DNA of 46,424 nucleotides from Octopus bimaculoides (Eukaryota). Below are positions 2,941-45,760 of this stretch, piece after piece. The translations under genes and the position numbers were made by a program. The stretch is from the NCBI RefSeq assembly GCF_001194135.2, contig NC_068996.1, positions 12,591,381-12,637,804 of the forward strand, read 5' to 3'. Positions within the stretch are counted from its first letter, which is position 1, and each line of letters opens with the position of its first letter. The notes under the pieces were generated by a model. The model made no database searches. It was not told the DNA's origin and saw only the letters and a list, made by a program, of their open reading frames with translations.

Positions 2941-3060
2941 AATGTATGTCTGTATATATCATCATCATATAAATATATATATATATATCTGCTAAGTTTA
3001 TGGGAAGCATCTTGAATATGCAGTATATACATATATATATGTATATGTGTATGTATATTT

Positions 3061-4078
3061 CATCGTTTAATGTCCATTTTCCATGCTGGCATAGGTTGGG
3101 CAATTCAACTGGAGCTGGTAAAGCCAGGGGCTACACTAGACTCCATTGTCTGTTCTGGCATAGCTTCTTCAGCTGGATGTCCTTCTTAATGCCAAGTACT
3201 TTACAGTGTGTACTGGATGCTTTTTATGTGGCACCAATACCAGTGCTTTTAACATGATACCAACATGGGTGCTTTTCATGTGGCACCAGCATTGGTATCA
3301 ATTCTGTTGTGGTGGACAGGTCTTCTTGAGTACAGTTTGACACTAGATATCTTGGTCCTTTGTTGTCTTTGTAAGGCTCAGTGTCTTGAGATCAGCCTTC
3401 AATACTTCATCCCATGTCCTCCTGGGTCTCCCACTTCCATATCCAACTGTCTGCAGTTATATGCATCACATGACCAAACCGGCACAATCTTCTCTCATGC
3501 ACAATGCATCTAATTCCTCTTATGTCCAGCTTTTCTCTCAACACACTAGCACTCTTTCTCGCACATGTACACTAACGCTGCACATTCAGCAGAACATACA
3601 AGCTTCCTTCCTCTCTAGCCTTCCCATGTCTTCTGCATTTGGGCCCACATCTCACTACCATGTAGCGTTGTTGTTTGTATGCATGCATCATACAATCTTC
3701 CTTTCACCCAGGAAGCGAGCAACCTTAGGTTGCCCACAGAAATAAAAGCTCTCAGTATTTTTTCCATCCTACTCTTATTTTAGTGATTACACTATCCATG
3801 CATCCTCCTCCACAACTAACTATGTCCTCCAGGTAGTAGAAATTATCCACTACCTCTAAAGAGCCTCTGGGTATCGGTAGTTTTTATGACTCCTGCACAT
3901 CTTCCACATATGAACACTTGCTTCTCTGACAACCTTCTTATTATTCTATTGCACCTTTTGTGTGTCCATAGTTTGCACCGGGTACACAATATGGAATTCC
4001 TGTCTGTCCCTTCTCTTGCTTACTAGAATCTTAGCCTTTGCTAAGTTAACCTGAAGGTTTTTTGATTTCAGGTTTTGC
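3061..4078 (-). mobile_element. 5'-truncated RTE-clade LINE (ORF2 C-terminus and 3' UTR)
   Basis: Minus-strand motifs QVNLAKAKILV, ERRLCRFGHVM and GRPRRTWDEVLKADL; 3' tail CCAACCTATGCCAGCATGG...ATTAAACGATG. Confidence 0.88.
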
Positions 4079-4197
4079 ATTTATGGCCATATCACGTTGA
4101 AAGCACCGGTTCTCGTCCGATCACCGAAGTTAAGCAACATCGAGCCTAGTTAGTACTTGGATGGGTGACCGCTTGGGAACCCTAGGTGCTGTAAGCA
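4079..4197 (+). rRNA. 5S rRNA: Dispersed, nearly full-length 5S rRNA copy (retrocopy or pseudogene), followed by TTTT and a retroposon tail
   Basis: TTATGGCCATATCACGTTGAAAGCACCGGTTCTCGTCCGATCACCGAAGTTAAGC...TAGTACTTGGATGGGTGACCGCTTGGGAACCCTAGGTGCTGTAAGCA. Helix I pairs (TTATGGC/GCTGTAA) and GCCTAG pairs with CTAGGT. Box A- and box C-like elements are present. The first two nt deviate. Single copy, no tandem array. Confidence 0.93.
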
Positions 4198-4202
4198 TTT
4201 TA

Positions 4203-4265
4203 ACACGGTGGTGCATCAGCATGGCCGCAGCTCTGAGCTGAAACTTTGAAATGAAATGAAATGAA

Positions 4266-4266
<1 letters not shown>
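4203..4266 (+). mobile_element. 43-bp retroposon 3' tail plus (TGAAA)n fused to the 5S copy
   Basis: ACACGGTGGTGCATCAGCATGGCCGCAGCTCTGAGCTGAAACT matches the reverse complement of 7896-7938 at 42/43 positions and resembles the SINE A tail. Confidence 0.85.
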
Positions 4267-4315
<49 letters not shown>

Positions 4316-4589
4316 ATATTATTTAAAAGAGTTCCAACTCTGTCTGTTTTTTATGTTTTATTCATATTCTCATAAAATTAATGTGGGATATGAAATATAT
4401 AATATAAATAGTAAAATGAAATGAAGTATTGAATGTCTTATTGAATATATGAAATATTGAGTATTAAATATAGAGTATTAAATATATAAGGACTAGTATA
4501 CTTTCCTGCCTCATGGCAGTCATCAAGGTCCTGTCTGACAGATCTGTATATATGTTTGAATACATATGTATATATGTATATATAAATGT

Positions 4590-4632
<43 letters not shown>

Positions 4633-4639
4633 ATATGAC

Positions 4640-4865
4640 TGTGTTTGTGTGTGTCTTTTTATTTTTGTTCTTTATCACCCCTTGACAATCAATCAGCCTT
4701 GGTTTGTTTTCATGCTCCTTTAACTTAGCAGTTCAACAAAACAAGACCGATAGAGAAAATTCCAAGTTTAAAATACGTACTGGGACAGATTTATTCTAAT
4801 GAACCTTTCAATGCACTGCCCCAGCATGGCCACAGTTGAATGACTGAAACAGATAAAAGATTAAA
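4640..4865 (+). mobile_element. SINE A 3' half
   Basis: TAACTTAGCAGTTC..AAGACCGATAG..CCCCAGCATGGCCACAGTTGAATGACTGAAAC. Confidence 0.75.
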
Positions 4866-5054
4866 AACACACATGCACATTATGCTATTCTTATTGTGAC
4901 TAAACCTGTAGCATGAGCATGATTCTAAAGAATCATTGACGTTAAATCTAATTCTTATAGATTTGTTAATAGCTGATACCAATCAGCTTGTTAATAATCA
5001 ATACATTCTTAATTATATATGCTGTAAATACATTTTCTGCTAATGAAAAACAAA

Positions 5055-5262
5055 CTAAAAGTGAGAAAGAAGCAAAAATTGTTGATAGCCTTTATCCTTC
5101 ATTTTCTCGTTTTAGTCAGTGGCCTGTGGCCATGCTAGAGCATCGCCTTGAAGGATTTTTGTCAAACAAATTGATTTCAGTACTTATTTTTAAAGCTTGG
5201 TACTTATTCTATCAGTGTCTCATGCTGAGCCGCTAAGTTATAAGGACATAAACAAACCAGGA
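5055..5262 (-). mobile_element. SINE A 3' half
   Basis: GTGGCCATGCTAGAGCATCGCC...GCCGCTAAGTTA. Confidence 0.7.
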
Positions 5263-5269
5263 TTGTTTT

Positions 5270-5930
5270 TAGGTCTGCAGTGACCACAGTTGGGAACAGT
5301 TAACCAGGCAACTGAAAACGAATGTTCGCCATTGAAGTAGTATCATATCCTTTTTCTTTCTGAAGGATCTATGCAGTAGTGTCCAGTTTGGTGGTTGGTA
5401 TAGCTTTCAATCTGAAACCTGAGAGCTAGACCTTTGTGAATCTTCCATATACAGATGACTGCATAGCTTTCACATCTTCTGTCTAGGGAGTAGAGGCACA
5501 GTTCTATTTAGCCTCTCCCAGTTGCTCATCTGTTGAACTGAGGCTCTCTTCTTTGTGTAGTGGTGTTACATTGCCTTGAGTCCTGCTGTTAGCGTGACAC
5601 CTGTGGCTTCAAAATAACAACAGTTGAGAGCATAGTTTAGGCTACTGAGAGCAAATCTTCTCCATAAGAGTAGCATGATATCTTTTTTCCTTCTCTTGGT
5701 ACTTTGCTATGGTGTCCAGTTCGGTGGTTGGTATAGCTTTCAGTTCCAAAGTTGGGAGGTGGACAAACGTTCTCCATTGGAGTAGCATCGTATCCAATTC
5801 CCTTGTTCAGAATGCTCTCAGAATCCAACCAGCCACTCACCTGCACAGCGTTACAATCTTGATAATATGCACATGGAATGATGCACCATTGCTCCTGTAG
5901 TTTCCCAGGTCACGCACCGATGTTTACAAT
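5270..5930 (-). mobile_element. CR1-type LINE ORF2 C-terminal relic, internally reiterated
   Basis: GWILRAF..DTMLLQWRTFV, KKDIMLLLWRRF and KKDMILLQWRTFVFSCLVNCSQLWS occur three times. Direct repeat GTGTCCAGTT(T/C)GGTGGTTGGTATAGCTTTCA near 5379 and 5712. Confidence 0.7.
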
Positions 5931-6217
5931 TTTTTTTATTAATTTGTTGTTTCTAATGTTTTGGTCTTTTTTAATAAAAATCTCTTTTGTATTTTATATA
6001 TTTATTTTTGACAAAAACACTCTCATCAGATATATCTCATTAACTGATTAAATTCAGATCGATATAAACAAACCAATTCTCATCTGCTGACTTAAACACA
6101 AGTCTTTATTATAAAATTACCAAATTAAATTCATATTTAAAAAAACAAAAAATTTAAGGAGCCTTTGTTGTTTTTATTTTGTTTGTTTTCTTGACAAATC
6201 TACCTTAGAACAGTTTG

Positions 6218-6254
<37 letters not shown>

Positions 6255-6819
6255 TATTATTAATGAGTGAGAGAATGGCACATACCATCAAAATGACACT
6301 GGGGTACAAATACACGAAACCCAATTTACCAGGCACATGCATCAAAACTATATTTGCATGACATACTGACCTCATATCAAGATAAACAGCGCATGACCTT
6401 GCAGGTGGGGGTCAGCTGGAATTTTCTTCAGGTCAAGTAGCCCATCCCACTCAACAGGTCCCCAAATAAAAGCTGTTCAAAGATGATGAATGAAACACCT
6501 GTATTTCTAGAAGCAGATGATTCAAACTTCAAAGAATTCCTCTCAACACATGGCTATGATGCTCCCCCACTACTTCTGCTCGTGATCAGAGATGCACATA
6601 TCGTCAGCCACCAAGGGACATGATCAATTGGTTAAGGTCAAATAACTGAGAAGCAAATCTGTGGTATTAAGCAGAATATTTGCTGTAGCCTATCTTTTGC
6701 ACCAACACAAAACATGTACATAAGACCACTTCCAATCAGTTATGATCAGAAGCCATGTGAGCCACTACCTGGTACTACACTACGGCATTATTATTATTAT
6801 CATTATTATCATCATCATC

Positions 6820-7860
6820 TAAGGTGATGAGCTAGCAGAATTGTTAGCACTATGACCGAAATGCTTAGTGGCATTTCATGTCTTCATGTTCTGAATTCAA
6901 ATTCTGCTGAGGTCAACTTTGCCTTTCATCTTTTTAGGGGTCAATAAATTAAGTACCAGTTGAGCACTGGGGTCAATGTAATCGACTTACCTTTCCCATG
7001 GAATTGCTGGCCTTGTGCCAAAATTTGAAGCCATTATTAGTATTAGTAGTAATATGGCAGTGAGCTGGCAGAATTGTCAGCATGCTGGGCAAAATGCTTA
7101 GCGGCATTTTGTCTATTTTCACATTCTAAGTTGAGATTCTACTGAGGATGATGACTTTGTCTTCCATTCTTTCAGGGTTGATAAAATAAGTATCAGTTGA
7201 CCACTGGGGTTGATGTAATTGACTATGGCCCTTGCCTGAAATGTGCCAAAATTTGAAATCATTATTACTAGTAGTAAGGCAGTGAGGTAGCAGAACCATT
7301 AGCGGCGAGCTGGCAGAAACGTTAGCATGTAGGGCGAAATGCTTAGCAGTATTTCGTCTGCCGTTACGTTCTGAGTTCAAATTCCGCCGAGGTCCACTTT
7401 GCCTTTCATCCTTTCGGGGTCGATAAATTAAGTACCAGTTACTCACTGGGGTCGATGTAATCGACTTAATCCCTTTGTCTGCCCTTGTTTGTCCCCTCTA
7501 TATTTAGCCCCTTGTGGGCAATAAAGAAATAAGAACCATTAGCATAATCCGTCTTTTTATAGGCACATGGCCTGAAAAATTCAGGAGAGGAAGTGGGGCT
7601 AATTGATTACATTGATCTCAGCTCTTGTCTGTCTTTCATCCTTTCTGAGTCAATAAAATAAGAACCAAAATCAACCTTGGTGGGATTTGAACTCAGAAAG
7701 CAAAGACAGGTAAGTCTAGCATGCTAACAATTCTGCTAGCTTGCTGCCTTATTATTATAATAATGGTTTCCAATTTTGGCACAAGGCCAACAATTTTAAG
7801 GCAAGTGGTACGTCGATTACATTGACCCCAGTTTATAACTGCTAACATTTCTGCTAGCTC
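6820..7860. mobile_element. Cluster of SINE B1 copies (+ at about 6820-7030 and 7055-7260; - at about 7545-7750 and 7765-7860)
   Basis: Head AAGG(C/T)(A/G)GTGAGCTGGCAGAA, core GCCTTTCATCCTTT..GGGTC.ATAAA.TAAGTACCAGT; separated by (ATT)n/(AAT)n. Confidence 0.85.
7304..7531 (+). mobile_element. Young SINE B2, full length
   Basis: GGCGAGCTGGCAGAAACGTTAGC...GGGCAATAAAGAAATA; TSD AGAACCATTAGC at 7292-7303 and 7532-7543. Confidence 0.92.
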
Positions 7861-7869
7861 ATCTCAATA

Positions 7870-7938
7870 ATTTTATTTTAATTTTTTATTTTTATAGTTT
7901 CAGCTTAGAGCTGCGGCCATGCTGATGCACCACCGTGT
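7870..7938 (-). mobile_element. Solo copy of the 43-bp retroposon tail with (ATAAAA)-like tail
   Basis: Reverse complement of AGTTTCAGCTTAGAGCTGCGGCCATGCTGATGCACCACCGTGT; one mismatch to 4203-4245. Confidence 0.85.
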
Positions 7939-8436
7939 ATAATAATAATAATAATAATTCACTGAAGAAAACATTACGTTTTTTATCAATTATTTATTAT
8001 TTTCAAATTTTCTTAAATTACAGAACATCTGAATAGTGATTGTGATATTAGAGAATACTTGATACAATAATTGCAAACTTGAGAGAGAGAGAGAGAGAGA
8101 GATAGAGTGAGAGTGAGAGAAAGTGGGGGAGAGAGCGAACACCCTTGCAGCTATTTAATAAGGGGATCTGAAGAAAGAAATGTTGTTTGATTGAGAGAAC
8201 AATTTCCCAGAGCAGCACTACAGAAAAAAAAGGAAGGGCCACAAAAGGAAGGGAACTTTGTGTATTTAGAATATGATCTTGTTTATTATATATTGACTTG
8301 CTTATTTTATACAAGCTGGCCAAAATAAACTAGTAAACTAAATAACACCAAGAAAATTCAAACTAAATATCTGTTATATTTCTTTCAGATAAAAAAATAA
8401 AACAGAACAAAACAAAAAGCAATATAAATAAGTAAA

Positions 8437-14324: not shown

Positions 14325-14687
<363 letters not shown>

Positions 14688-14689
14688 TG

Positions 14690-14691
<2 letters not shown>

Positions 14692-15660: not shown

Positions 15661-16395
15661 GAAATGATATCTGGTATGGGCATTTGTTTCAAATGATTTC
15701 ACTTTTAAAGAGATAACTAATTATAAATGCAAGTTCAGATTGTCATTTATAAGTCAATAGCACAAAACATGCTTAGAGTGAATTACCAACTAATATGCTA
15801 GAGTTATTTTTAAAATATGGATATGTAGATTCAAGACTATTTTAGGTCCAGCCAGAGTTTTAATTTAGGTCTTTGTTATTGTGACCAAGAAGTAAATTTT
15901 TGCATCAGTTTGGAATGACTGGTTGTTGTGGTAAGCAACTAATAATATGAAATTTGCAACAGATTTTATTTTTATTTTTCATGTTTCAAAAGTGTTCATT
16001 AAAAAACATATTTTCAAATGTTACGTATATACATACACACATACATACTTGCATACACATATGTGAATGTGTGTATATGTATACACTTAAACATACACAC
16101 ACACACACACACATATATATGTATATATATCTAATATATATGTATTTAAACACGCACATACATTTACATATATCTAATATATATGTACCTAAACACATAA
16201 ATAAATAACAGCAGATGGAAATTGGTTTTTTCTTTATATGGTATTTATACCATATAAATATAGTTTTTTTTATTGATGAACAGAATTATTACAGCATGCA
16301 AAAAAAAACCCGTATAAAAACGTTTTCTTCAAGTGAATATACATGAATTCAACATCTTAAAAAATACATCTAATACATATATATATATATATATA

Positions 16396-17393
16396 NNNNN
16401 NNNNNNNNNNNNNNNNNNNNNNNNNNNNNNNNNNNNNNNNNNNNNNNNNNNNNNNNNNNNNNNNNNNNNNNNNNNNNNNNNNNNNNNNNNNNNNNNNNNN
16501 NNNNNNNNNNNNNNNNNNNNNNNNNNNNNNNNNNNNNNNNNNNNNNNNNNNNNNNNNNNNNNNNNNNNNNNNNNNNNNNNNNNNNNNNNNNNNNNNNNNN
16601 NNNNNNNNNNNNNNNNNNNNNNNNNNNNNNNNNNNNNNNNNNNNNNNNNNNNNNNNNNNNNNNNNNNNNNNNNNNNNNNNNNNNNNNNNNNNNNNNNNNN
16701 NNNNNNNNNNNNNNNNNNNNNNNNNNNNNNNNNNNNNNNNNNNNNNNNNNNNNNNNNNNNNNNNNNNNNNNNNNNNNNNNNNNNNNNNNNNNNNNNNNNN
16801 NNNNNNNNNNNNNNNNNNNNNNNNNNNNNNNNNNNNNNNNNNNNNNNNNNNNNNNNNNNNNNNNNNNNNNNNNNNNNNNNNNNNNNNNNNNNNNNNNNNN
16901 NNNNNNNNNNNNNNNNNNNNNNNNNNNNNNNNNNNNNNNNNNNNNNNNNNNNNNNNNNNNNNNNNNNNNNNNNNNNNNNNNNNNNNNNNNNNNNNNNNNN
17001 NNNNNNNNNNNNNNNNNNNNNNNNNNNNNNNNNNNNNNNNNNNNNNNNNNNNNNNNNNNNNNNNNNNNNNNNNNNNNNNNNNNNNNNNNNNNNNNNNNNN
17101 NNNNNNNNNNNNNNNNNNNNNNNNNNNNNNNNNNNNNNNNNNNNNNNNNNNNNNNNNNNNNNNNNNNNNNNNNNNNNNNNNNNNNNNNNNNNNNNNNNNN
17201 NNNNNNNNNNNNNNNNNNNNNNNNNNNNNNNNNNNNNNNNNNNNNNNNNNNNNNNNNNNNNNNNNNNNNNNNNNNNNNNNNNNNNNNNNNNNNNNNNNNN
17301 NNNNNNNNNNNNNNNNNNNNNNNNNNNNNNNNNNNNNNNNNNNNNNNNNNNNNNNNNNNNNNNNNNNNNNNNNNNNNNNNNNNNNNNNNNNNN
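16396..17393. other. Assembly gap; further gaps at 19658-19739, 20855-21440, 27318-27647 and 28918-29350
   Basis: N runs, all bordered by (TA)n or (CA)n. ORFs that cross them are artefacts. Confidence 0.98.
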
Positions 17394-19657: not shown

Positions 19658-19739
19658 NNNNNNNNNNNNNNNNNNNNNNNNNNNNNNNNNNNNNNNNNNN
19701 NNNNNNNNNNNNNNNNNNNNNNNNNNNNNNNNNNNNNNN

Positions 19740-20852: not shown

Positions 20853-21440
20853 ATNNNNNNNNNNNNNNNNNNNNNNNNNNNNNNNNNNNNNNNNNNNNNN
20901 NNNNNNNNNNNNNNNNNNNNNNNNNNNNNNNNNNNNNNNNNNNNNNNNNNNNNNNNNNNNNNNNNNNNNNNNNNNNNNNNNNNNNNNNNNNNNNNNNNNN
21001 NNNNNNNNNNNNNNNNNNNNNNNNNNNNNNNNNNNNNNNNNNNNNNNNNNNNNNNNNNNNNNNNNNNNNNNNNNNNNNNNNNNNNNNNNNNNNNNNNNNN
21101 NNNNNNNNNNNNNNNNNNNNNNNNNNNNNNNNNNNNNNNNNNNNNNNNNNNNNNNNNNNNNNNNNNNNNNNNNNNNNNNNNNNNNNNNNNNNNNNNNNNN
21201 NNNNNNNNNNNNNNNNNNNNNNNNNNNNNNNNNNNNNNNNNNNNNNNNNNNNNNNNNNNNNNNNNNNNNNNNNNNNNNNNNNNNNNNNNNNNNNNNNNNN
21301 NNNNNNNNNNNNNNNNNNNNNNNNNNNNNNNNNNNNNNNNNNNNNNNNNNNNNNNNNNNNNNNNNNNNNNNNNNNNNNNNNNNNNNNNNNNNNNNNNNNN
21401 NNNNNNNNNNNNNNNNNNNNNNNNNNNNNNNNNNNNNNNN

Positions 21441-22770: not shown

Positions 22771-22834
22771 AAAAGAATGTCTGTCAAATTGTTTGTGTTT
22801 TATTTCTGTTATGCTCTTCTTTCATGATAATATA

Positions 22835-22971
22835 TATACATACACACACATACATAATACATACATACATACACACATACATACGCACATACATACATAC
22901 ATACATACATACATACATACTTACACACATACATACACACATACACATACATTCATACACACACACATACA

Positions 22972-23003
<32 letters not shown>

Positions 23004-23029
23004 CATACATGCACACATACATACATACA

Positions 23030-23409: not shown

Positions 23410-24320
23410 TATCTTCATCATCATCATCATAGAATGTCTGTTTTCCATGCTGGCATGGATTGGATGTTTTGACTGGAGCTGACCAGCCATTGAGCTGTCC
23501 AGGTTCCAGTTGTCTGTTTTGGTTTGGTTTCTATGGCTGAATGCCCTTCCTAATGCTAATCACTTTTACGACTGGACAGGTGCATTTTATGTGGCATTCG
23601 CATGGGTGCATTGTGTGTGGCACCGGTATGAGTGTATTTTACGTGGCACTGGCATCTGCAAGTCAAGTCAAAGACCTCTCCATTTGTAGAGGGAGTGGGT
23701 GGCATGGCCATAAAGGACATGCCTGTATGTATGGATGGGCATGACTTTACTTGACGTCTCTTCTTAAGTACAGCAAATTCCCACAAGTCTCAGTCCCTTG
23801 TTATCTTCTCAGTGAGGCCAAGCATCGGAAGATCCTTTCTCACCACTTCGTCCCATGTCTTCCTGGGTCTACCCCTTCCACAGGTTCCTTCCACAATTAG
23901 AAATCAGTACATTTTTCAGCAGCTGTCCTCATCCATACGCATCAAATGACTATACCACTGCAGTCTACTTTCTTGCACACAACCTCTGATGCCTTCTTAT
24001 ATCCAGTTTTCATCTTGAATCATTTACACTCTGCCGTATGTGCACACAAACATTACCCATCCTTTCAGTGCATGCTGGCTTCATTTCCTTCAAACCTTCA
24101 TGAGTTTTCTGTAGTGATATCCTATGTTTCACTGCCATGTAGCGTAGCTGTCTGTATACAGGCATCAAACAATCTACCCTTCACTCTGAGGGAAAGGCCG
24201 TTAGTTACCAACATAGGTAGTAACACTCTGACCTTTGACCAGCCTGTTCTTATTCTAGCAACTATCCATTCAGAACTTCCTCTTCCACTGCTATCTTGAT
24301 CACCTAGGTAACAGAAAGTG
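23410..24320 (-). mobile_element. 5'-truncated RTE-clade LINE
   Basis: YLGD..RIRTGWSKVRVLLPML..LSLRVKGRLFDACIQTATLHGSET, RLQWYSHLMRMD and GRGRPRKTWDEVVRKD; (GAT)n tail. Confidence 0.9.
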
Positions 24321-24729
24321 TGTGTGTGAGTGTGTTTTGTAATTTGCTCCAAAAGAAAAGGTAAAAAAAAAGAAAGAAAAGACGTTTTCCATCTCATCTT
24401 TTGCTCATTTCTCTTAGAATTTTAAACATTACTAAATTTTTTTCATTCTATATTCTATGTTAACTTTCAGTTCTTCAATTTTTAGGCATTTTCTTTTTCA
24501 GATTCATTTATTTTCCTTTGTTCATCAACAATGCATAAATAAAATTGATTGGTTCTATAGAATAGCATCCATTCTGTGCTACAATTCATTGAACAAGCTA
24601 TCAAAACAGTGCTGGGGATTGTAAACTTAAATTATTTTGTGAAATACATATTGAAAAATTAAAAAAAAGAAAGAATAAAACCTTTGTTTTCTGCTTCCTT
24701 CATGACCTTATGTATATGTTTATATATAT

Positions 24730-26447: not shown

Positions 26448-26497
<50 letters not shown>

Positions 26498-26675
26498 TAT
26501 CTATCTATATACATGCATATATATATATGCATGTATATAGATAAACATGCATGGTATATATGCTTGTGTATGTATGGCCTGGCTATAGTAGAAGGTACAT
26601 GACATCTGGTATTGAACTTGGAATACTATGTGGTTGGGAAACAAACTTCTTACCACACAGCCACATCTGCACCTT
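26265..26675 (-). mobile_element. SINE A
   Basis: Tail at 26270-26310 and head CTTCTTACCACACAGCCAC at 26645-26665. Confidence 0.75.
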
Positions 26676-27142: not shown

Positions 27143-28045
27143 TGGCACAGGTATGGCTGTGTGGTAAGAAGTTTGCTTTCCAACCACATGGTTCTGGGTT
27201 CAGTCCCACTGCATTGCACTTTTTACTGTTGCCTCTGGTTAACCAAAGCCTTGTCAGTGGGTTTGGTAGACAAAAACTGAAAGATGCCTATTGTATATAT
27301 ATATATATATATATATANNNNNNNNNNNNNNNNNNNNNNNNNNNNNNNNNNNNNNNNNNNNNNNNNNNNNNNNNNNNNNNNNNNNNNNNNNNNNNNNNNN
27401 NNNNNNNNNNNNNNNNNNNNNNNNNNNNNNNNNNNNNNNNNNNNNNNNNNNNNNNNNNNNNNNNNNNNNNNNNNNNNNNNNNNNNNNNNNNNNNNNNNNN
27501 NNNNNNNNNNNNNNNNNNNNNNNNNNNNNNNNNNNNNNNNNNNNNNNNNNNNNNNNNNNNNNNNNNNNNNNNNNNNNNNNNNNNNNNNNNNNNNNNNNNN
27601 NNNNNNNNNNNNNNNNNNNNNNNNNNNNNNNNNNNNNNNNNNNNNNNGTGCTGGTGTGTTTACGTTCCCGTAACTTAGCGGTTCGGCAAAAGAGACCGAT
27701 AGAATAAGTACTAGGCTTCCAAAGAAGAAGTCCTGGGGTTGATTTGCTCGACTAAAAGCGGTGCTCCAGCATGGCCGCAGTCAAATGACTGAAACAAATA
27801 AAAGAGTAAAAGAGTAAAAGAGTATATGTGTGTGTGTGTGTTTGTCTGTCTGTCTGTCTTTGCATTTGCCTCATCACCACGTGACTACTGGTGTTGGTTT
27901 GTTTATGTTCCATAACTTAGCAGTTCAGCAAAACTGAATAAGAACCAGGCTTTAAAAAAGTAAATACTGAGATTGATTCATTCAACTAAGAATTCCTCAA
28001 AGCAGTGCCCCAATTTCCCTTGTCTGAAACAAGGGATAAAAGATA
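27143..28045 (+). mobile_element. SINE A spanning an N-gap (27143-27825) plus a second 3' half (27840-28045)
   Basis: Head at 27143; young tail GCGGTGCTCCAGCATGGCCGCAGTCAAATGACTGAAAC. Confidence 0.8.
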
Positions 28046-28917: not shown

Positions 28918-29350
28918 NNNNNNNNNNNNNNNNNNNNNNNNNNNNNNNNNNNNNNNNNNNNNNNNNNNNNNNNNNNNNNNNNNNNNNNNNNNNNNNNNNN
29001 NNNNNNNNNNNNNNNNNNNNNNNNNNNNNNNNNNNNNNNNNNNNNNNNNNNNNNNNNNNNNNNNNNNNNNNNNNNNNNNNNNNNNNNNNNNNNNNNNNNN
29101 NNNNNNNNNNNNNNNNNNNNNNNNNNNNNNNNNNNNNNNNNNNNNNNNNNNNNNNNNNNNNNNNNNNNNNNNNNNNNNNNNNNNNNNNNNNNNNNNNNNN
29201 NNNNNNNNNNNNNNNNNNNNNNNNNNNNNNNNNNNNNNNNNNNNNNNNNNNNNNNNNNNNNNNNNNNNNNNNNNNNNNNNNNNNNNNNNNNNNNNNNNNN
29301 NNNNNNNNNNNNNNNNNNNNNNNNNNNNNNNNNNNNNNNNNNNNNNNNNN

Positions 29351-30604: not shown

Positions 30605-30975
30605 CAAGCCTGACTGTATGGTAAGAAATTTGTTTCTCGACCACATGGTTTTGGGTTCAATCTTACTACAGGGTACCTTGGGCAAGTGTCTTCTGAAGCC
30701 ACAGGTTTACGAAAGCCTTGTAAATGGATTTGGTTGATGGAAACTGAAAAGAAGCCCATCAAAGGTATATATATGTGTGTATGTGTGTTTATCTCTCACC
30801 ATCACTTGATAGATGGTGTTAGTCTGTTTACATCCCTGTAACTTAGCAGTTCAGCAAAAGAGACCAACAGGATAAGTATCAGACTCTAAGAAAAAATGTA
30901 CTGGGGCCAGTTCATTCGACTAAAATGCTTCAAGGCAGTGCTCCAGTATGGCTGCAGTCAATGACTGGTATAAGT
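30605..30975 (+). mobile_element. SINE A, full length
   Basis: Head, body and tail match the family. Confidence 0.85.
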
Positions 30976-31231
30976 AAATGATTTATATATATGTATGTGT
31001 GTATACATGCACACACACATGCCTATATATATATATATATATATCTATATATATATACACACACAGATACATGCACATACACACACACACGTGTGTGTGT
31101 ATACATGCACGCTCACACACACACATATATATATATATACACACACGCACACGTGTATGTGCATGTATCTGTGTATATGTTTGTACAGATTAAGCATGTA
31201 TATATTTGCAACTTATTGGATTGTCACCATC

Positions 31232-32656: not shown

Positions 32657-32661
32657 TTAAA

Positions 32662-33078
32662 CTCTTACTCTTTTACACTTTTACTTGTTTCAGTCATTTG
32701 ACTGTGGCCATGCTGGAGCACCGCCCCCAGTCGAAAACAAATCGACCCCAGGACTTATTCTTTATAAGCCTAGTTCTTATTCTATCGGTCTCTTTTGCCG
32801 AACCGCTAAGTTACGGGGACGTAAATACACCAGCATCAGTTGTCATGCGATGTTGGGAGAACAAACACAGACACACAAACATATACACACACATATATAT
32901 ATATATATACATATATACGACAGGCTTCTTTCAGTTTCTGTCTACCAAATCCACTCACAAGGCTTTGGTCGGCCCGAGGCTATAGTAGAAGACACTTGCC
33001 CAAGGTGCCACACAGTGGGACTGAAGCCGGAACCATGTAGTTGGTAAGGAAGCTACTTACCACACAGCCACTCCAGCG
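32662..33078 (-). mobile_element. SINE A, young, near consensus (CpGs retained)
   Basis: CAGTCATTTGACTGTGGCCATGCTGGAGCACCGCC...CTACTTACCACACAGCCACTCC. Confidence 0.9.
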
Positions 33079-39105: not shown

Positions 39106-39529
39106 TTTATATATATATATGATTACATCATGTTACCGAATTGCAATTTATGAAAGAAATGAGGTTAAACTGTTTAAAGTGTTTTTGTTTTTTTTTGAAC
39201 GGCTATTAACTTAAGTGTACTTCCATCATAAAAATATGGGTTCCAACCTTTGTTCAAGGTTAATAAAAATGTTCAAAGTTGATGTTGTTGTTATTGTTAT
39301 TATTTTGGAAATATATGTTAACCTACTTTTGTTGCCAAAATATTTGGCTTATTAATAAGTGTGCATGTATATGTTTGTTTGAGTGTATTTGCTTCTGAGT
39401 CTCTGTTTATGTGTGTATGTGTCCGTGCATCCTTTTTAGTTATCTATATTAGTGTATCGGCTCTTGTCTGCATGTATGCATATGCACTTATGTGTGTATG
39501 TATGTATGTGTGTGTATGTATATATATAT

Positions 39530-39542
39530 ATGTATCTATATC

Positions 39543-39573
<31 letters not shown>

Positions 39574-39576
39574 CTA

Positions 39577-39649
<73 letters not shown>

Positions 39650-39680
39650 GTATATATATATATATGTGTATATATATTCA
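39530..39680. repeat. (TATC)n/(TA)n microsatellite
   Basis: Read directly from the sequence. Confidence 0.9.
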
Positions 39681-42029: not shown

Positions 42030-42225
42030 GTGGTGGCATGTAAAAAGCACTCAGCACACTCTGTTAATTGGTTGGCATTAGGAAGGGCATCCAGCCTTAG
42101 AAACCATGCCACAACAGACATCTGAAGTCTGGACAGCACCCTGCTAGCCAGCTGCATGTCAGACCATCCAACCCATACCAGCATGGAAAGAGGACATTAA
42201 ACAATGATAATGATGTTGATGATAT
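42030..42225 (+). mobile_element. RTE 3'-UTR/tail fragment
   Basis: GGTTGGCATTAGGAAGGGCATCCAGC...CCAACCCATACCAGCATGGAAAG. Confidence 0.78.
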
Positions 42226-42272
42226 ATGCACTTATATAGTTATATGTAAACACACATACTGATCTATGTGTA

Positions 42273-42336
<64 letters not shown>

Positions 42337-42399
42337 ACAGAAATAATATGTTAGAAAACAAAATAGAAACTACCCGTGGAAATGTAAGGGGAAAGTAAG

Positions 42400-42869: not shown

Positions 42870-43755
42870 CCAGCTAAACATTTGAAAGGCTTGAAAATAA
42901 TCAATCAATAAAAGGCTTGAAAGAAGTATCAAATCCAAGCCCTGCTTCTATGAATCATGCATCTTAACTGTTATTCTATATTCTTCTGAGACTTGGACTA
43001 CATATTGTAATCACACCAAGGCTTTGGAAAGATTCAATCAGACTTGCCTTAGCAGGATTTTAAATGTCAGATGGTCATCTGTAACAACAGACAGTTGTTT
43101 TTCAGCAAGACAACGCATACAGTACTGAAATGCTTCTCATACACTCTCAGATCCATTGGGTGTCCTTACAAGGATGCATGATGACAGGTTATCTAAGCAG
43201 TTGTTTTACGGGGAGTTGCAACATGGTAAATATCTGAGGCATAAACTTAAGAAATGTTTTAGGGATTCCATCAAAAGCAGCTATAAGGTTCTTAGTGTGG
43301 CTGTTTGAAAACTGGGAACAGATGATGGAAAATTGATCAGTTTGGAGAGAATGGTTGTAAAGTATTTGAGTCTTGAAGAATCAAGGAAACCATCTTGAAA
43401 ATATCAGTTCATGAACAGACCTTAGCTTCAATTCCAAACACACTTCTGCCTGAGAATGTTTTTAACATCTGCTGTACAGTCTGTTTGTCCCAAACCTAGA
43501 CTTGCTAGGTATGTGAGATTTCATGATGATATTTACTGATTGAAAAGAAGATTTTCTTCTCTAATTAAGTGGTAATCACTGCTTAAATATATTTGGAAGA
43601 CTCAAAAAAGTCATATGTGATCTGACAGAGATATTACTATCATAACCATGCTCAACATCTACGAATCTTTGGATTTTAGCTGCTCTTTTATATTCTTCTG
43701 AGATTTGGACTACATTTCCTTGGCACATCAAAGCTTTGGAAAGATTCAATCAAAC
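42870..43755 (+). mobile_element. RTE (BovB-like) ORF2 C-terminal relic with a partial duplicate at 43600-43755
   Basis: LYSSETWTTY..HTKALERFNQ (twice) and DDRLSKQLFYGELQHGK..KKCFRDSIK. Confidence 0.8.
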
Positions 43756-43794
43756 TTGTTTATATATATATGTATGTGTATATGTGTACACACA

Positions 43795-43836
<42 letters not shown>

Positions 43837-44521: not shown

Positions 44522-45760
44522 ATGAAAACTTACAGCTTATTCTGCTGGGTATGATGGAAAGTGTCAGCTGTCCACAGACAGCAGACTAAGGTGACACTTG
44601 TTTATCGGTCATGCTTCAAGAATCCTGTGATGAATTCTTGCAGTTCCAAGCAATTCTGATTTTTGTGGGTGTTCTACCTTCACACTTGCACCAATCTTTT
44701 TGAGCCATGTTGGTAGTTGAGTGCTAATACTTCCAAATGCACCAATTACTATTGGTATCACGTCTACTCTCTTCATTGACCAAAACCTTCATATTTCCCT
44801 CTTTAAATCGTCGTAGTTGCTTATTTTTTCTTCTTTTACATTGATCCTGTTGTTACCGGAGCATGCTATGTCGATTATCATACATGTTCTTTCTTTTTTT
44901 ATTCACCACAACAATATCCAGTTTTCAATGTCTGGTCTGGTGATCACACTGGATCATTACATCCTACAGGATTTTGCAATTATCATATTTGATGACTCCT
45001 TCTCACGTTTGCTCATGTGACATCTTTGCTCTTTGTAGGCCATGATTTCCATAGAGTCCCCAATGGATCCTTCTTGCTACATTGACATAGCATCTTTTGT
45101 ATTCCTGTTGTGTGCCACACATTCTGCATTTGTTGCACTTGGTAGTGTTGTCTATTCTGCACTTCATATAATTAGTCCTTAATGCTTGTTCCTGAGCTGT
45201 GTATATGAGTGCCTCTGTCTCTAACTTCTGGTCACTCCTCCTCATCCATAGCCACTGGTCCTCTGTATCTGTCTGGGTGTTCATATCTCTGACTATCATA
45301 CATTTTCTTTTCCTTCCATGCTTTTCTTTTTTTGTTCATTTCTTGTTTAAAATTTTCTGTCATTACACAATTTTCAGTTTTGATGACTCCAGCCTTCTTT
45401 GTGTGTTTCAACAATAGCTCCATGTCATTTTGTATATACCACCCTAGGCTGGTTTCCTCAGTTTTGATACAGTCTTGGCAACTGATTAAACCTCACCCAC
45501 CCTTTCTTCTGAATAAGTCCAACCTATCAGCATCACCCTTGGGGTGGAAGGCTCTGTGTGCTGTCAAAATTTCTCTTCTCTCTTTTGCTATTTTATAAAT
45601 TCCCGCTTCATACCAAAGTGATGCTATCACCCACATATTAACCACTTGGATTTTATTCCATCCGCTCAATTTTGAGCGCAACACCAACCTCAATCTTCAG
45701 AAATACTCCATCCTCAGTTGCTCTTTCATTTCCTTATCCATTATCTTATTGAACTATTAT
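44522..45760 (-). mobile_element. 5'-truncated R4/Dong-clade non-LTR retrotransposon (CCHC and restriction-like endonuclease region)
   Basis: HRAFHPKGDADRL, KLETEALIYTAQEQALRTNY..CRMCG, VARRIHWGL, PIVIGAFGSI and ELLGTARI; both ends lie in (TAA)n on the element strand. Confidence 0.85.

What the first reader, a model, noticed from the sequence alone, without database searches (positions are those of the whole stretch)
4079..4266. 5S rRNA fused through its oligo-T terminator to a retroposon 3' tail: a candidate 5S/LINE chimera or nascent 5S-SINE
Seen: a structurally intact 5S, then TTTT, then a 43-bp tail and (TGAAA)n. The tail also occurs without 5S at 7896-7938. There is no 5S array spacer. 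Known: mammalian U6/L1 chimeras have the same layout (complete Pol III RNA, its U-tail, then a LINE 3' end), and 5S-headed SINE3 families exist in fish and other groups. Inference: an octopus LINE machinery joins Pol III RNAs to its own tail by template switching or RNA ligation. Because boxes A and C look intact, read-through past TTTT could make this a mobilisable 5S-SINE. I know of no such description for cephalopods but could not search.
Basis: partly seen in the sequence, partly recalled or inferred. Interest (0 to 1): 0.75.

Follow-up and report, generated by a model that had tools for sequence, protein, structure and literature searches.

The report
5S rRNA retrocopy with retroposon tail
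In this Octopus bimaculoides DNA a complete 5S ribosomal RNA copy runs through its own T-run straight into the 43-base 3' end module used by the genome's SINE-type jumping elements; it is most likely an RNA-level fusion pasted in as one unit, a kind of event known from mammals, and nothing here shows that it founded a new mobile family.

Summary
Rfam finds one full-length 5S rRNA at 4079-4197 (108 bits). It is followed by TTTT, a 43-nt block, (TGAAA)4 and (TA)n. The block recurs once, on the minus strand (7897-7939), without 5S.

New findings:
- The block is a variant of the 3' module of a SINE-like repeat present nine more times in the window. It has the same two hairpins, one with two compensatory pairs, then A-rich short repeats. 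It is therefore a retroposon tail, not 5S spacer and not a transposon end.
- A decayed RTE-like LINE on the minus strand ends 2 nt before 5S position +1, so the 5S has transcript-exact ends and no spacer.
- CpG observed/expected is 0.85 for 5S+tail, 0.22 for that LINE and 0.26 for the window median. The block is young.

Best reading (about 0.55): a 5S transcript with its U-tail was joined to the tail module by template switching and inserted as one unit.

The "nascent 5S-SINE" idea is weakened by the intact T4 terminator between head and tail. Interest is moderate.

The parts
4079..4197 (+). Full-length 5S rRNA copy (119 nt): the head of the unit.
   Evidence: Rfam RF00001, 108.1 bits, model 1-120. 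Only two non-canonical pairs. CpG o/e 0.96 against a window median of 0.26.
4198..4201 (+). TTTT: the 5S terminator, or the U-tail of the nascent transcript. This is the junction to the tail.
   Evidence: Read from the sequence.
4202..4244 (+). 43-nt retroposon 3' module with two hairpins, CGGU-GUGC/GCAU-GCCG and CAGCU/AGCUG, ending in GAAAC.
   Evidence: Two copies in the window against 0 expected. MFE -17.9 kcal/mol, z -1.95. 35 of 45 aligned columns identical to the tail of the window's SINE-like repeat, with the same two hairpins and two compensatory pairs in hairpin 2.
4245..4268 (+). TT(TGAAA)4AA: the short tandem repeat end of the retroposed unit.
   Evidence: Sequence. The SINE-like relatives end in (AAGTAAAAGAG)n at the same place.
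4269..4321 (+). (TA)n microsatellite grown at or from the A-rich end. It hides the 3' boundary and any TSD.
   Evidence: TRF: period 2, 26 copies.
3319..4077 (-). Older, decayed RTE-like LINE fragment (RT C-terminus, PHD-like finger, GSEMW region). This is the insertion context. It stops 2 nt before 5S +1.
   Evidence: tblastn of P0129/P0130 matches 4077..3319 on the minus strand, starting 23 residues after the YADD box of P0130. Weak Pfam PHD hit. CpG o/e 0.22. Several stops and frameshifts.
7897..7939 (-). Second, solo copy of the 43-nt module with the same 5' boundary. It sits inside the (AAT)n tail of another SINE.
   Evidence: 2 mismatches. No 5S upstream; (ATT)n upstream in its own orientation.
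7868..7896 (-). A-rich (TAAAA)-like 3' run of the solo copy.
   Evidence: blastn extension 4203-4267 against 7938-7876, 88%. Sequence.

Best explanation
This is a bipartite retrocopy. In the germ line of an Octopus ancestor, a LINE reverse transcriptase began target-primed reverse transcription on the 3' end of a tail-bearing RNA. That end carries (UGAAA)n repeats and a two-hairpin 43-nt recognition module of the type carried by the abundant SINE-like repeats of this genome. The enzyme copied the module to its 5' edge and then continued on the 3' end of a 5S rRNA transcript that still had its U-run, either by template switch or, less likely, on a pre-ligated RNA. It ran to 5S position +1, and the cDNA was joined to the chromosome beside an older RTE-like LINE fragment.

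The result is one discrete, fairly young insert: 5S, TTTT, 43-mer, (TGAAA)n.

Shown:
- the parts and their order
- that the 43-mer is a retroposon 3' module
- the transcript-exact limits of the 5S
- the young and equal CpG state of 5S and tail

Inferred:
- that both parts arrived in one event
- the template switch

As it stands the locus is probably a dead end rather than a SINE master, because the T4 run should stop Pol III before the tail.
For: (1) The 5S is full length in sense orientation and is followed at once by TTTT and the module.

(2) The module is a genuine retroposon 3' end:
- Nine SINE-like repeats in the window end in a homologous sequence, each followed by A-rich short repeats.
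- Both hairpins are kept. Hairpin 2 differs by two fully compensatory pairs, U-A/C-G against C-G/U-A.
- Both hairpins persist in the fold of a hypothetical 5S-tail RNA.

(3) A solitary 5S with RNA-exact limits:
- There is only one 5S in 46 kb.
- Homology to a minus-strand LINE runs to 4077, 2 nt before 5S +1. No gene spacer exists on the 5' side, and the tail starts right after the U-run on the 3' side.
- A 5S RNA has no A-rich 3' end of its own for priming. The tail supplies one.

(4) Age:
- CpG o/e is 0.96 for the 5S and 0.85 for 5S+tail, against 0.22 for the abutting LINE and 0.26 for the window median.
- P(>=9 CpG) = 0.002 at background decay.
- Both CpGs of the tail are kept in both copies.
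- Head and tail are thus similarly young and much younger than the flank.

(5) The layout matches U6/L1 chimeras as described in the literature. Pairs of tRNA-headed and 5S-headed SINEs that share one LINE tail are known elsewhere: HaSE1/HaSE3 and CoeSINE4/CoeSINE5.
Against: - No TSD flanks 5S+tail. The best direct repeat is a 7-mer 22 and 27 bp away from the borders, and the 3' border is buried in (TA)n.
- The old LINE does not resume on the far side of the insert. The insert therefore sits exactly at the LINE's 5' end, or a target deletion has to be assumed.
- A solo module with the very same 5' boundary exists (7897-7939). Modules can therefore insert alone, which keeps the 'tail landed next to a 5S' reading alive.
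- A 5-bp repeat TTTAA brackets tail+(TA)n (4199-4203 / 4322-4326).
- The native O. bimaculoides 5S sequence, the parent LINE, other copies, the orthologous empty site and transcripts could not be examined.
Confidence: 0.55

Rival explanations
1. It is one member of an established 5S-headed SINE family (SINE3-like) of octopus. Its master is transcribed by Pol III from the 5S internal promoter through the tail and is mobilised by the LINE that owns the tail. The solo copy at 7897-7939 would be a 5'-truncated member.
For: - The head + LINE-type tail architecture equals that of SINE3, HaSE3 and CoeSINE5.
- Two copies of this exact tail subtype lie within 3.7 kb, which suggests the subtype is abundant.
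- The identical 5' boundary of both tail copies would be explained if both derive from one master.
- The block is young.
Against: - TTTT lies between head and tail. From general knowledge T4 terminates Pol III, and described 5S-SINE heads lack the terminator.
- There is only one 5S in 46 kb, although other SINEs occur 9+ times.
- Octopus SINE surveys name tRNA-Core and tRNA-Deu families only. A 2024 review table of 5S-derived SINEs lists fish, insects and mammals but no mollusc.
- Truncation of copy 2 exactly at the head/tail joint would be a coincidence.
Confidence: 0.15
2. Two independent events. A 5S gene or orphon was already here, and a solo tail unit (43-mer + (TGAAA)n), like the one at 7897-7939, later inserted by chance at the TTTT/AAAA site formed by the 5S terminator.
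For: - Solo units with the same 5' boundary exist.
- Removing 4204-4321 restores ...GCATTTTAAAAGAG..., a T-run/A-run site of the kind many LINE endonucleases nick (general knowledge).
- TTTAA is repeated at both borders.
Against: - The 5-mer lies in AT-rich low-complexity DNA with a fuzzy 3' border. By rough estimate a chance match is about 0.1-0.2.
- The 5S has no upstream spacer, since LINE homology reaches -2. A pre-existing DNA-level 5S gene would need a second exact-boundary coincidence.
- A 5S retrocopy without a tail has no obvious priming end.
- 5S and tail show the same young CpG state, while the surrounding DNA is decayed.
Confidence: 0.15
3. A single composite, twin-priming-like event. 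One nick primed the RTE-like LINE (minus strand). The opposite nick primed the tail RNA, which switched to 5S. The two cDNAs met head-to-head at 4078/4079.
For: - Geometry: the 3' ends are outward and the 5' ends abut within 2 nt.
- Human 5S/L1 chimeras are reported to be mostly antisense, with the START of the 5S at the LINE junction, and are ascribed to twin priming.
- Both outer borders lie in TA-rich microsatellite.
Against: - CpG o/e is 0.22 (0.08 in its 3' part) for the LINE against 0.85 for 5S+tail. The LINE also has many stops and frameshifts. The two are very unlikely to be the same age.
- Two different tail types would have had to be used at one break.
Confidence: 0.06
4. The two 43-mers, inverted and 3.6 kb apart, are the terminal inverted repeats of a DNA transposon that begins CACGGTG, and the 5S merely lies outside its left end.
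For: - Inverted pair 4203-4256 / 7885-7938, 91% complementary.
- The 5-bp flanks TTTAA / TATAA match at 4 of 5 positions.
Against: - The same module ends nine SINE-like repeats in both orientations, each followed by A-rich short repeats and not arranged in pairs.
- Its hairpins covary like an RNA element.
- No transposase remnant is evident in the six-frame read of 4245-7896, which is filled with SINEs (read by eye; this interval was not scanned against Pfam).
- The flanks are low-complexity.
Confidence: 0.02
5. Assembly artefact: the short-read draft assembly joined a 5S repeat to a tail repeat.
For: The window is a gapped draft with five N runs, and both parts are repeats.
Against: - 5S and tail share no sequence except TTTT through which a graph assembler could cross.
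- The flanks on both sides are continuous and contain no N.
Confidence: 0.03

Closest known systems
U6 snRNA/LINE-1 chimeric retrocopies of mammals (Buzdin et al. 2002, 2003; Moldovan et al. 2019; bioRxiv 10.1101/2025.02.02.635956)
   Same: A full-length Pol III RNA in sense orientation, with its own 3' end, is fused directly to the 3' end of a retroposon. Each is thought to be a one-off that does not propagate.
   Different: - The partner here is not L1 with poly(A). It is a structured 43-nt module with (TGAAA)n, i.e. a 'stringent' tail type.
- The breakpoint in the tail is the same in both window copies, whereas L1 breakpoints vary.
- No TSD was readable.
- The RtcB ligation route proposed for U6 relies on U6's cyclic-phosphate end (abstract plus general knowledge). 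5S is not known to have such an end.
Human 5S rRNA/LINE-1 chimeras
   Same: 5S rRNA captured by LINE machinery. The 5S start lies at a LINE junction, as it does here with the minus-strand RTE-like fragment.
   Different: The human cases are mostly antisense and truncated at 5S position 46 or 90. Here the 5S is complete and in sense to its tail, and the antisense LINE next to it is much older by CpG decay.
5S-headed SINEs (SINE3 of zebrafish, HaSE3 of Lepidoptera, CoeSINE5 of coelacanth, MEG-RS/RL of fruit bats)
   Same: A 5S-derived head plus a LINE-derived tail. These occur as sister to tRNA-headed SINEs with the same tail, HaSE1/HaSE3 and CoeSINE4/CoeSINE5. Here the tRNA-type SINE-like repeat of the window carries the sister tail.
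   Different: - Those are multi-copy families, usually with a body between head and tail.
- To my knowledge they have no Pol III terminator inside.
- Here there is one copy, no body and an intact TTTT.
- Family status is untested.
Stringent LINE/SINE 3' tails (eel UnaL2/UnaSINE1: conserved stem-loop plus (TGTAA)n; Kajikawa and Okada 2002, cited)
   Same: A short stem-loop module directly upstream of short tandem 3' repeats, shared between different retroposons.
   Different: The autonomous LINE that owns this octopus module was not identified, and recognition by its RT is inferred, not shown.
Chimeric retropseudogenes of Magnaporthe (MINE LINE + WEIRD RNA; BMC Genomics 2007, PMC2104539)
   Same: Non-mammalian evidence that LINE RTs jump templates and make bi- or tripartite retrocopies (abstract).
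   Different: Fungal system, different RNAs, many copies documented.

Membership tests
LINE-mediated bipartite chimeric retrocopy (U6/L1 type) | Full-length small Pol III RNA at the 5' side, in sense to the retroposon part. | tested here: met
   Rfam 5S model 1-120 at 4079-4197 (+); the tail is on the same strand.
LINE-mediated bipartite chimeric retrocopy (U6/L1 type) | The small RNA ends with its natural oligo-U and is fused without spacer to the retroposon 3' end. | tested here: met
   ...GTAAGCA TTTT AACACGG....
LINE-mediated bipartite chimeric retrocopy (U6/L1 type) | The 3' part is the 3' end of an autonomous LINE. | tested here: inconclusive
   The module is homologous to the tails of nine SINE-like repeats. 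No LINE with this tail lies in the window. The two LINE types present end differently.
LINE-mediated bipartite chimeric retrocopy (U6/L1 type) | Target-site duplications enclosing the whole chimera. | tested here: inconclusive
   No repeat of 6 bp or more at the borders. The 3' border is masked by (TA)n.
LINE-mediated bipartite chimeric retrocopy (U6/L1 type) | Junction unique to the locus; empty site in relatives. | not testable with these tools
There were no octopus hits in the metagenome, genome or viral collections or in the protein index.
5S-headed SINE (SINE3) | 5S-derived head carrying the internal promoter (box A, IE, box C). | tested here: inconclusive
   The whole 5S is present. Promoter function and the native octopus 5S sequence are unknown. 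CCTAGT stands at the intermediate element where Xenopus has CCTGGT (from memory). This is probably a native covarying variant, since the partner strand changed too.
5S-headed SINE (SINE3) | LINE-type 3' tail. | tested here: met
5S-headed SINE (SINE3) | Transcribable as one unit, with no Pol III terminator between head and tail. | tested here: not met
   TTTT at 4198-4201 lies between 5S and tail. That T4 terminates Pol III is general knowledge. Leakiness in octopus is untested.
5S-headed SINE (SINE3) | Many dispersed copies with the same head-tail junction and their own TSDs. | not testable with these tools
   One junction in 46 kb. The genome-wide search was impossible.
Functional 5S rRNA gene of a tandem array | Tandem repeats with a conserved spacer. 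| tested here: not met
   A single 5S in the window. Decayed LINE reaches to -2 and a retroposon tail begins at +124.
Stringent-type LINE/SINE 3' tail | Conserved stem-loop(s) next to the 3' end, kept by compensatory change. | tested here: met
   Two hairpins are predicted in 8 of 11 tails. Hairpin 2 is CAGUC/GACUG in SINE copies and CAGCU/AGCUG in the 43-mer, two double-sided changes. The sample is small and the alignment of the loop was set by hand.
Stringent-type LINE/SINE 3' tail | Short tandem repeats at the very 3' end. | tested here: met
   (TGAAA)4 here; (AAGTAAAAGAG)n or (TAAAAGAG)n in the SINE copies.
DNA transposon with terminal inverted repeats | The ends occur as inverted pairs with TSDs around a transposase or its remnant. 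| tested here: not met
   The same module occurs 9 more times singly as the 3' end of SINE-like repeats. No transposase-like stretch is evident in the six-frame read of 4245-7896 (by eye, no Pfam scan of this interval).

The most novel reading that the evidence does not exclude
The 43-nt module is a free-standing 'tail cassette' with a fixed 5' end, either a short RNA of its own or an obligatory jump point of the octopus LINE reverse transcriptase. It would be joined again and again to the 3' ends of Pol III transcripts (5S here; tRNA-type heads in the abundant SINEs). The octopus genome would then hold a series of fresh head+cassette fusions: SINE birth caught in the act, possibly including a young, still active 5S-headed SINE, the first in a mollusc.
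Probability: 0.15. Interest if true: 0.7.

Novelty: new member of a known kind. Interest (0 to 1): 0.4.

Why it matters
SINEs are thought to arise when a LINE reverse transcriptase, having copied its own 3' recognition end, switches to a Pol III transcript. Direct intermediates consisting only of a complete small RNA, its U-tail and a minimal tail are rarely seen outside mammalian L1 chimeras.

Octopus genomes are unusually rich in SINEs: about 40% of the repeat complement. A clean 5S+minimal-tail fusion made by a structured (non-poly-A) tail would therefore be a useful specimen for how those families were born. The recurrent 43-nt boundary hints at where this enzyme lets go of its template.

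If genome-wide searches show only this one locus, it is a curiosity that extends chimeric retrocopies to cephalopods. If they show many heads on the same cassette, it becomes a model for SINE genesis.

Tried and rejected
No copy-number, polymorphism or RNA data were obtained.
- Exact-pattern scans for the tail core, tail 3' part and this 5S variant gave 0 hits in every case: metagenome contigs, genome contigs, viral contigs. These collections hold no octopus DNA.
- Protein-index trick: I searched the minus-frame ORF that reads through tail and 5S. It found only a 5S-derived ORF on a Tara Oceans contig of some other eukaryote, with no tail. The window's own ORF is not indexed either, so this says nothing about copy number.
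- The look-up of encoding contigs for a nearby 119-aa ORF: not on record.
- Exon search to reach orthologous loci: it identified the species (O. bimaculoides) but no other Octopus species in the index. No empty-site test was possible.
- LINE search with the flank: only three relatives, none from octopus contigs. Sampling the genome through TE proteins therefore failed.
- Paralogous empty site inside the window: the LINE paralogue at 23754-24325 ends before the relevant part.
- Literature search for the tail sequence itself: none found. Several paper look-ups were wasted on 'sine' matching 'sinensis'.
- TIR/Transib-like idea (CACGGTG start, 5-bp flanks): rejected, see rivals.
- The idea that the tail is the coding C-terminus of a LINE ORF (open frame ending at the first TGA): no support. 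The related SINE tail differs by a 1-nt indel, and an open frame over 14 codons is not unusual.
- Dating the 5S by comparison with a 'generic mollusc 5S' recalled from memory: abandoned as unreliable. Three of the apparent differences are compensatory and are probably native to octopus.

Full report
**What is there.** The window is Octopus bimaculoides. The exon-like ORF at 14328-14690 is identical to a cluster holding UniRef A0A0L8FH24 and XP_014789867. Rfam at gathering threshold finds exactly one RNA gene in 46 kb: a full-length 5S rRNA at 4079-4197 on the plus strand (108.1 bits, E 6e-23, model 1-120). A permissive scan finds no second 5S or fragment, and ARAGORN finds no tRNA gene. Only two pairs are non-canonical, A1.C118 and C17.A61.

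The 5S is followed by:
- TTTT (4198-4201)
- a 43-mer (4202-4244)
- TT(TGAAA)4 (to 4266) and an A-run
- (TA)n to about 4321

The 43-mer recurs once with two mismatches at 7897-7939 on the minus strand, against 0 expected by chance. It has no 5S there. It is followed in its own orientation by a (TAAAA)-like run and preceded by (ATT)n. Both copies begin at the same base (ACACGG).

**What the 43-mer is.** A search for its core found nine further relatives in the window. All are the 3' end of a SINE-like repeat (...GGCGGTGCTCCAGCATGGCCGCAGTCAAATGACTGAAAC), and each is followed by (AAGTAAAAGAG)n-type short repeats. The 43-mer shares 35 of 45 aligned columns with that tail. Folding each copy gives the same two hairpins in most of them (the 43-mer alone folds at -17.9 kcal/mol, z -1.95). 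In hairpin 2 the SINE copies have CAGUC/GACUG and the 43-mer has CAGCU/AGCUG, so two adjacent pairs changed on both sides (the loop gap was placed by hand because MAFFT put it in the stem).

A structured module directly before short tandem 3' repeats is the architecture of 'stringent' LINE/SINE tails such as UnaL2/UnaSINE1 (general knowledge; the papers are cited within). The 43-mer is therefore a retroposon 3' module of a sister lineage to the window's main SINE tail. It is not 5S spacer.

I considered that the two inverted 43-mers might be transposon TIRs, given the CACGGTG start and the flanks TTTAA/TATAA. I rejected this because the module otherwise occurs singly as an RNA-like 3' end.

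The autonomous LINE that owns the module is not in the window. The two LINE types present end in ...CCAGCATGGAAAATGGACATTAAACGATGA and in (TAA)n. Petrosino et al. report RTE and Dong as the full-length LINEs of this species.

**Surroundings.** On the minus strand, 3319-4077 is a decayed RTE-like LINE. Its translation needs three frames and contains stops, but it shows the RT C-terminus (QNLKSKNLQVNLAKAKILVS), a PHD-like CxxC...WxHxxC finger and ...GRLYDACIQTTTLHGSEMW (weak Pfam PHD hit). The last protein search returned three relatives. tblastn places P0130 residues 195-353 and P0129 residues 19-309 on 4077..3319, starting 23 residues after the YADD box. The LINE thus stops 2 nt before 5S +1 and does not resume beyond the (TA)n. 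The 5S has no upstream spacer: its limits are those of the transcript, from +1 to the U-run.

**Relative age.** The window is strongly CpG-depleted, with o/e 0.27 overall and a median of 0.26 in GC-rich 166-bp windows. Values for the parts:
- abutting LINE: 0.22 (its 3' part 0.08)
- 5S: 0.96
- 5S+tail: 0.85

P(>=9 CpG) = 0.002 if the block were at background. Both CpGs of the tail are kept in both copies. Young SINE copies elsewhere in the window show the same o/e of about 1, and old ones about 0.25. Head and tail are therefore both young and clearly younger than the LINE next to them.

**Mechanism.** The most economical reading is one retroposition event. The enzyme primed on the (UGAAA)n end of a tail-bearing RNA, copied the 43-nt module and continued onto a 5S transcript that still carried its U-run. 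It ran to the 5S 5' end and the cDNA was joined beside the older LINE.

This is the layout reported for U6/L1 chimeras: a full-length RNA, in sense orientation, 5' of the LINE end. Human 5S/L1 chimeras differ, being mostly antisense and truncated, with the 5S start at the LINE junction, and are ascribed to twin priming. That prompted a test of a composite event involving the minus-strand LINE, whose 5' end does meet 5S +1. The large CpG-age difference argues against it.

Shown are the parts, the nature of the tail, the RNA-exact limits and the age pattern. Inferred are co-insertion and template switching. Ligation before reverse transcription, as shown for U6, cannot be excluded, but it relies on a 3' end chemistry not known for 5S (general knowledge).

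**What speaks against it, and the rivals.**
- No TSD encloses 5S+tail, and the 3' border is lost in (TA)n.
- A solo module with the same 5' boundary shows that modules can land alone.
- Deleting 4204-4321 restores GCATTTTAAAAGAG with TTTAA at both borders, so 'the tail inserted at the terminator of a resident 5S' stays possible at about 0.15. It would need a spacer-less DNA-level 5S exactly abutting a LINE end, plus a second exact hit at the terminator.
- Membership of a real 5S-SINE family (about 0.15) could not be tested.
- The intact T4 run between head and tail fails a defining requirement of a Pol III-transcribed SINE, so as it stands the locus is more likely a dead end than a master.
- Surveys of octopus repeats name tRNA-Core and tRNA-Deu SINEs only. 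A 2024 review table of 5S-derived SINEs lists no mollusc. My full-text searches found no cephalopod 5S-SINE or 5S chimera.

**Limits.** No octopus DNA is in the searchable DNA collections. The protein index holds almost no octopus non-coding ORFs or TE proteins. Copy number, parent LINE, native 5S sequence, empty site and expression therefore remain untested. The exact computations that would decide them are listed under next steps.

**Verdict.** This is a real, well-delimited and fairly young 5S + retroposon-tail fusion. It is best explained as a bipartite retrocopy made by template switching of an octopus LINE enzyme. That makes it a new (cephalopod, structured-tail) member of a known kind. 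The claim of an incipient SINE is not supported by what can be seen. Interest is moderate (0.4). It would rise if the fixed 43-nt cassette turns out to be fused to many Pol III RNAs.

Noticed in passing
window 4203 and 7938 (5' ends of the two 43-mers): Both copies of the tail module start at exactly the same nucleotide although their upstream neighbours are unrelated (5S-TTTT against (ATT)n). This suggests a fixed 5' end of the template or a preferred jump or stop point of the reverse transcriptase at the foot of hairpin 1.
   Followed up: partly
window 3059-4077 (-) and 23754-24325 (-): Two decayed copies of an RTE-like LINE whose ORF carries a PHD-like finger after the RT domain. Its 3' end is ...CCAGCATGGAAAATGGACATTAAACGATGA, and its last about 200 bp (3060-3262) recur about ten times in the window as a separate short repeat.
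   Followed up: partly
window 4618-4866 (+) and 5099-5268 (-): Two copies of the SINE-like repeat lie tail-to-tail about 230 bp apart, forming a long inverted repeat. This is a potential dsRNA or A-to-I editing substrate if transcribed.
   Followed up: no
window 7221-7341, 27652-27811, 32661-32900: Some SINE copies have CpG o/e of about 1.0-1.3 in a window whose median is 0.26. These are very young insertions, so retroposition has been recent in this region.
   Followed up: partly
window 14328-14690 (+): This is exon 1 of a nuclear receptor (zinc-finger DNA-binding domain, PF00105). The species' record names it RXR-alpha-A-like, but the named relatives found are estrogen-related receptors. The 5S-tail lies about 10 kb upstream.
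   Followed up: partly
window 44560-45300 (-): C-terminal fragment of another LINE (...TEALIYTAQEQALRTNYMKCRIDNT...CNKCRMCG...). It ends in a long (TAA)n run, the tail type shared by the (AAT)n-tailed SINEs at 7640-7864. It may be Dong/R4-like.
   Followed up: no
window-wide: 793-1115, 16012-16132, 22831-23026, 26479-26577, 30970-31210, 39464-39680, 42222-42347, 43753-43834: All Rfam 'evalue' hits to mir-297, mir-3149, mir-466, mir-1277 and others fall on (TA)n/(TG)n microsatellites and lie far below gathering scores. They are artefacts.
   Followed up: yes
protein P0130 (NCBI: MAG, Herbaspirillum sp.): A protein filed under a bacterial metagenome-assembled genome is an animal-type LINE reverse transcriptase with a PHD finger, 50% identical to the octopus fragment. 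This is likely eukaryotic contamination of that MAG.
   Followed up: no
window 16396-17393, 19658-19739, 20855-21440, 27318-27647, 28918-29350: Five assembly gaps (N runs), each flanked by (TA)n or (TG/CA)n microsatellites. The draft assembly breaks at simple repeats, not at the 5S-tail.
   Followed up: yes
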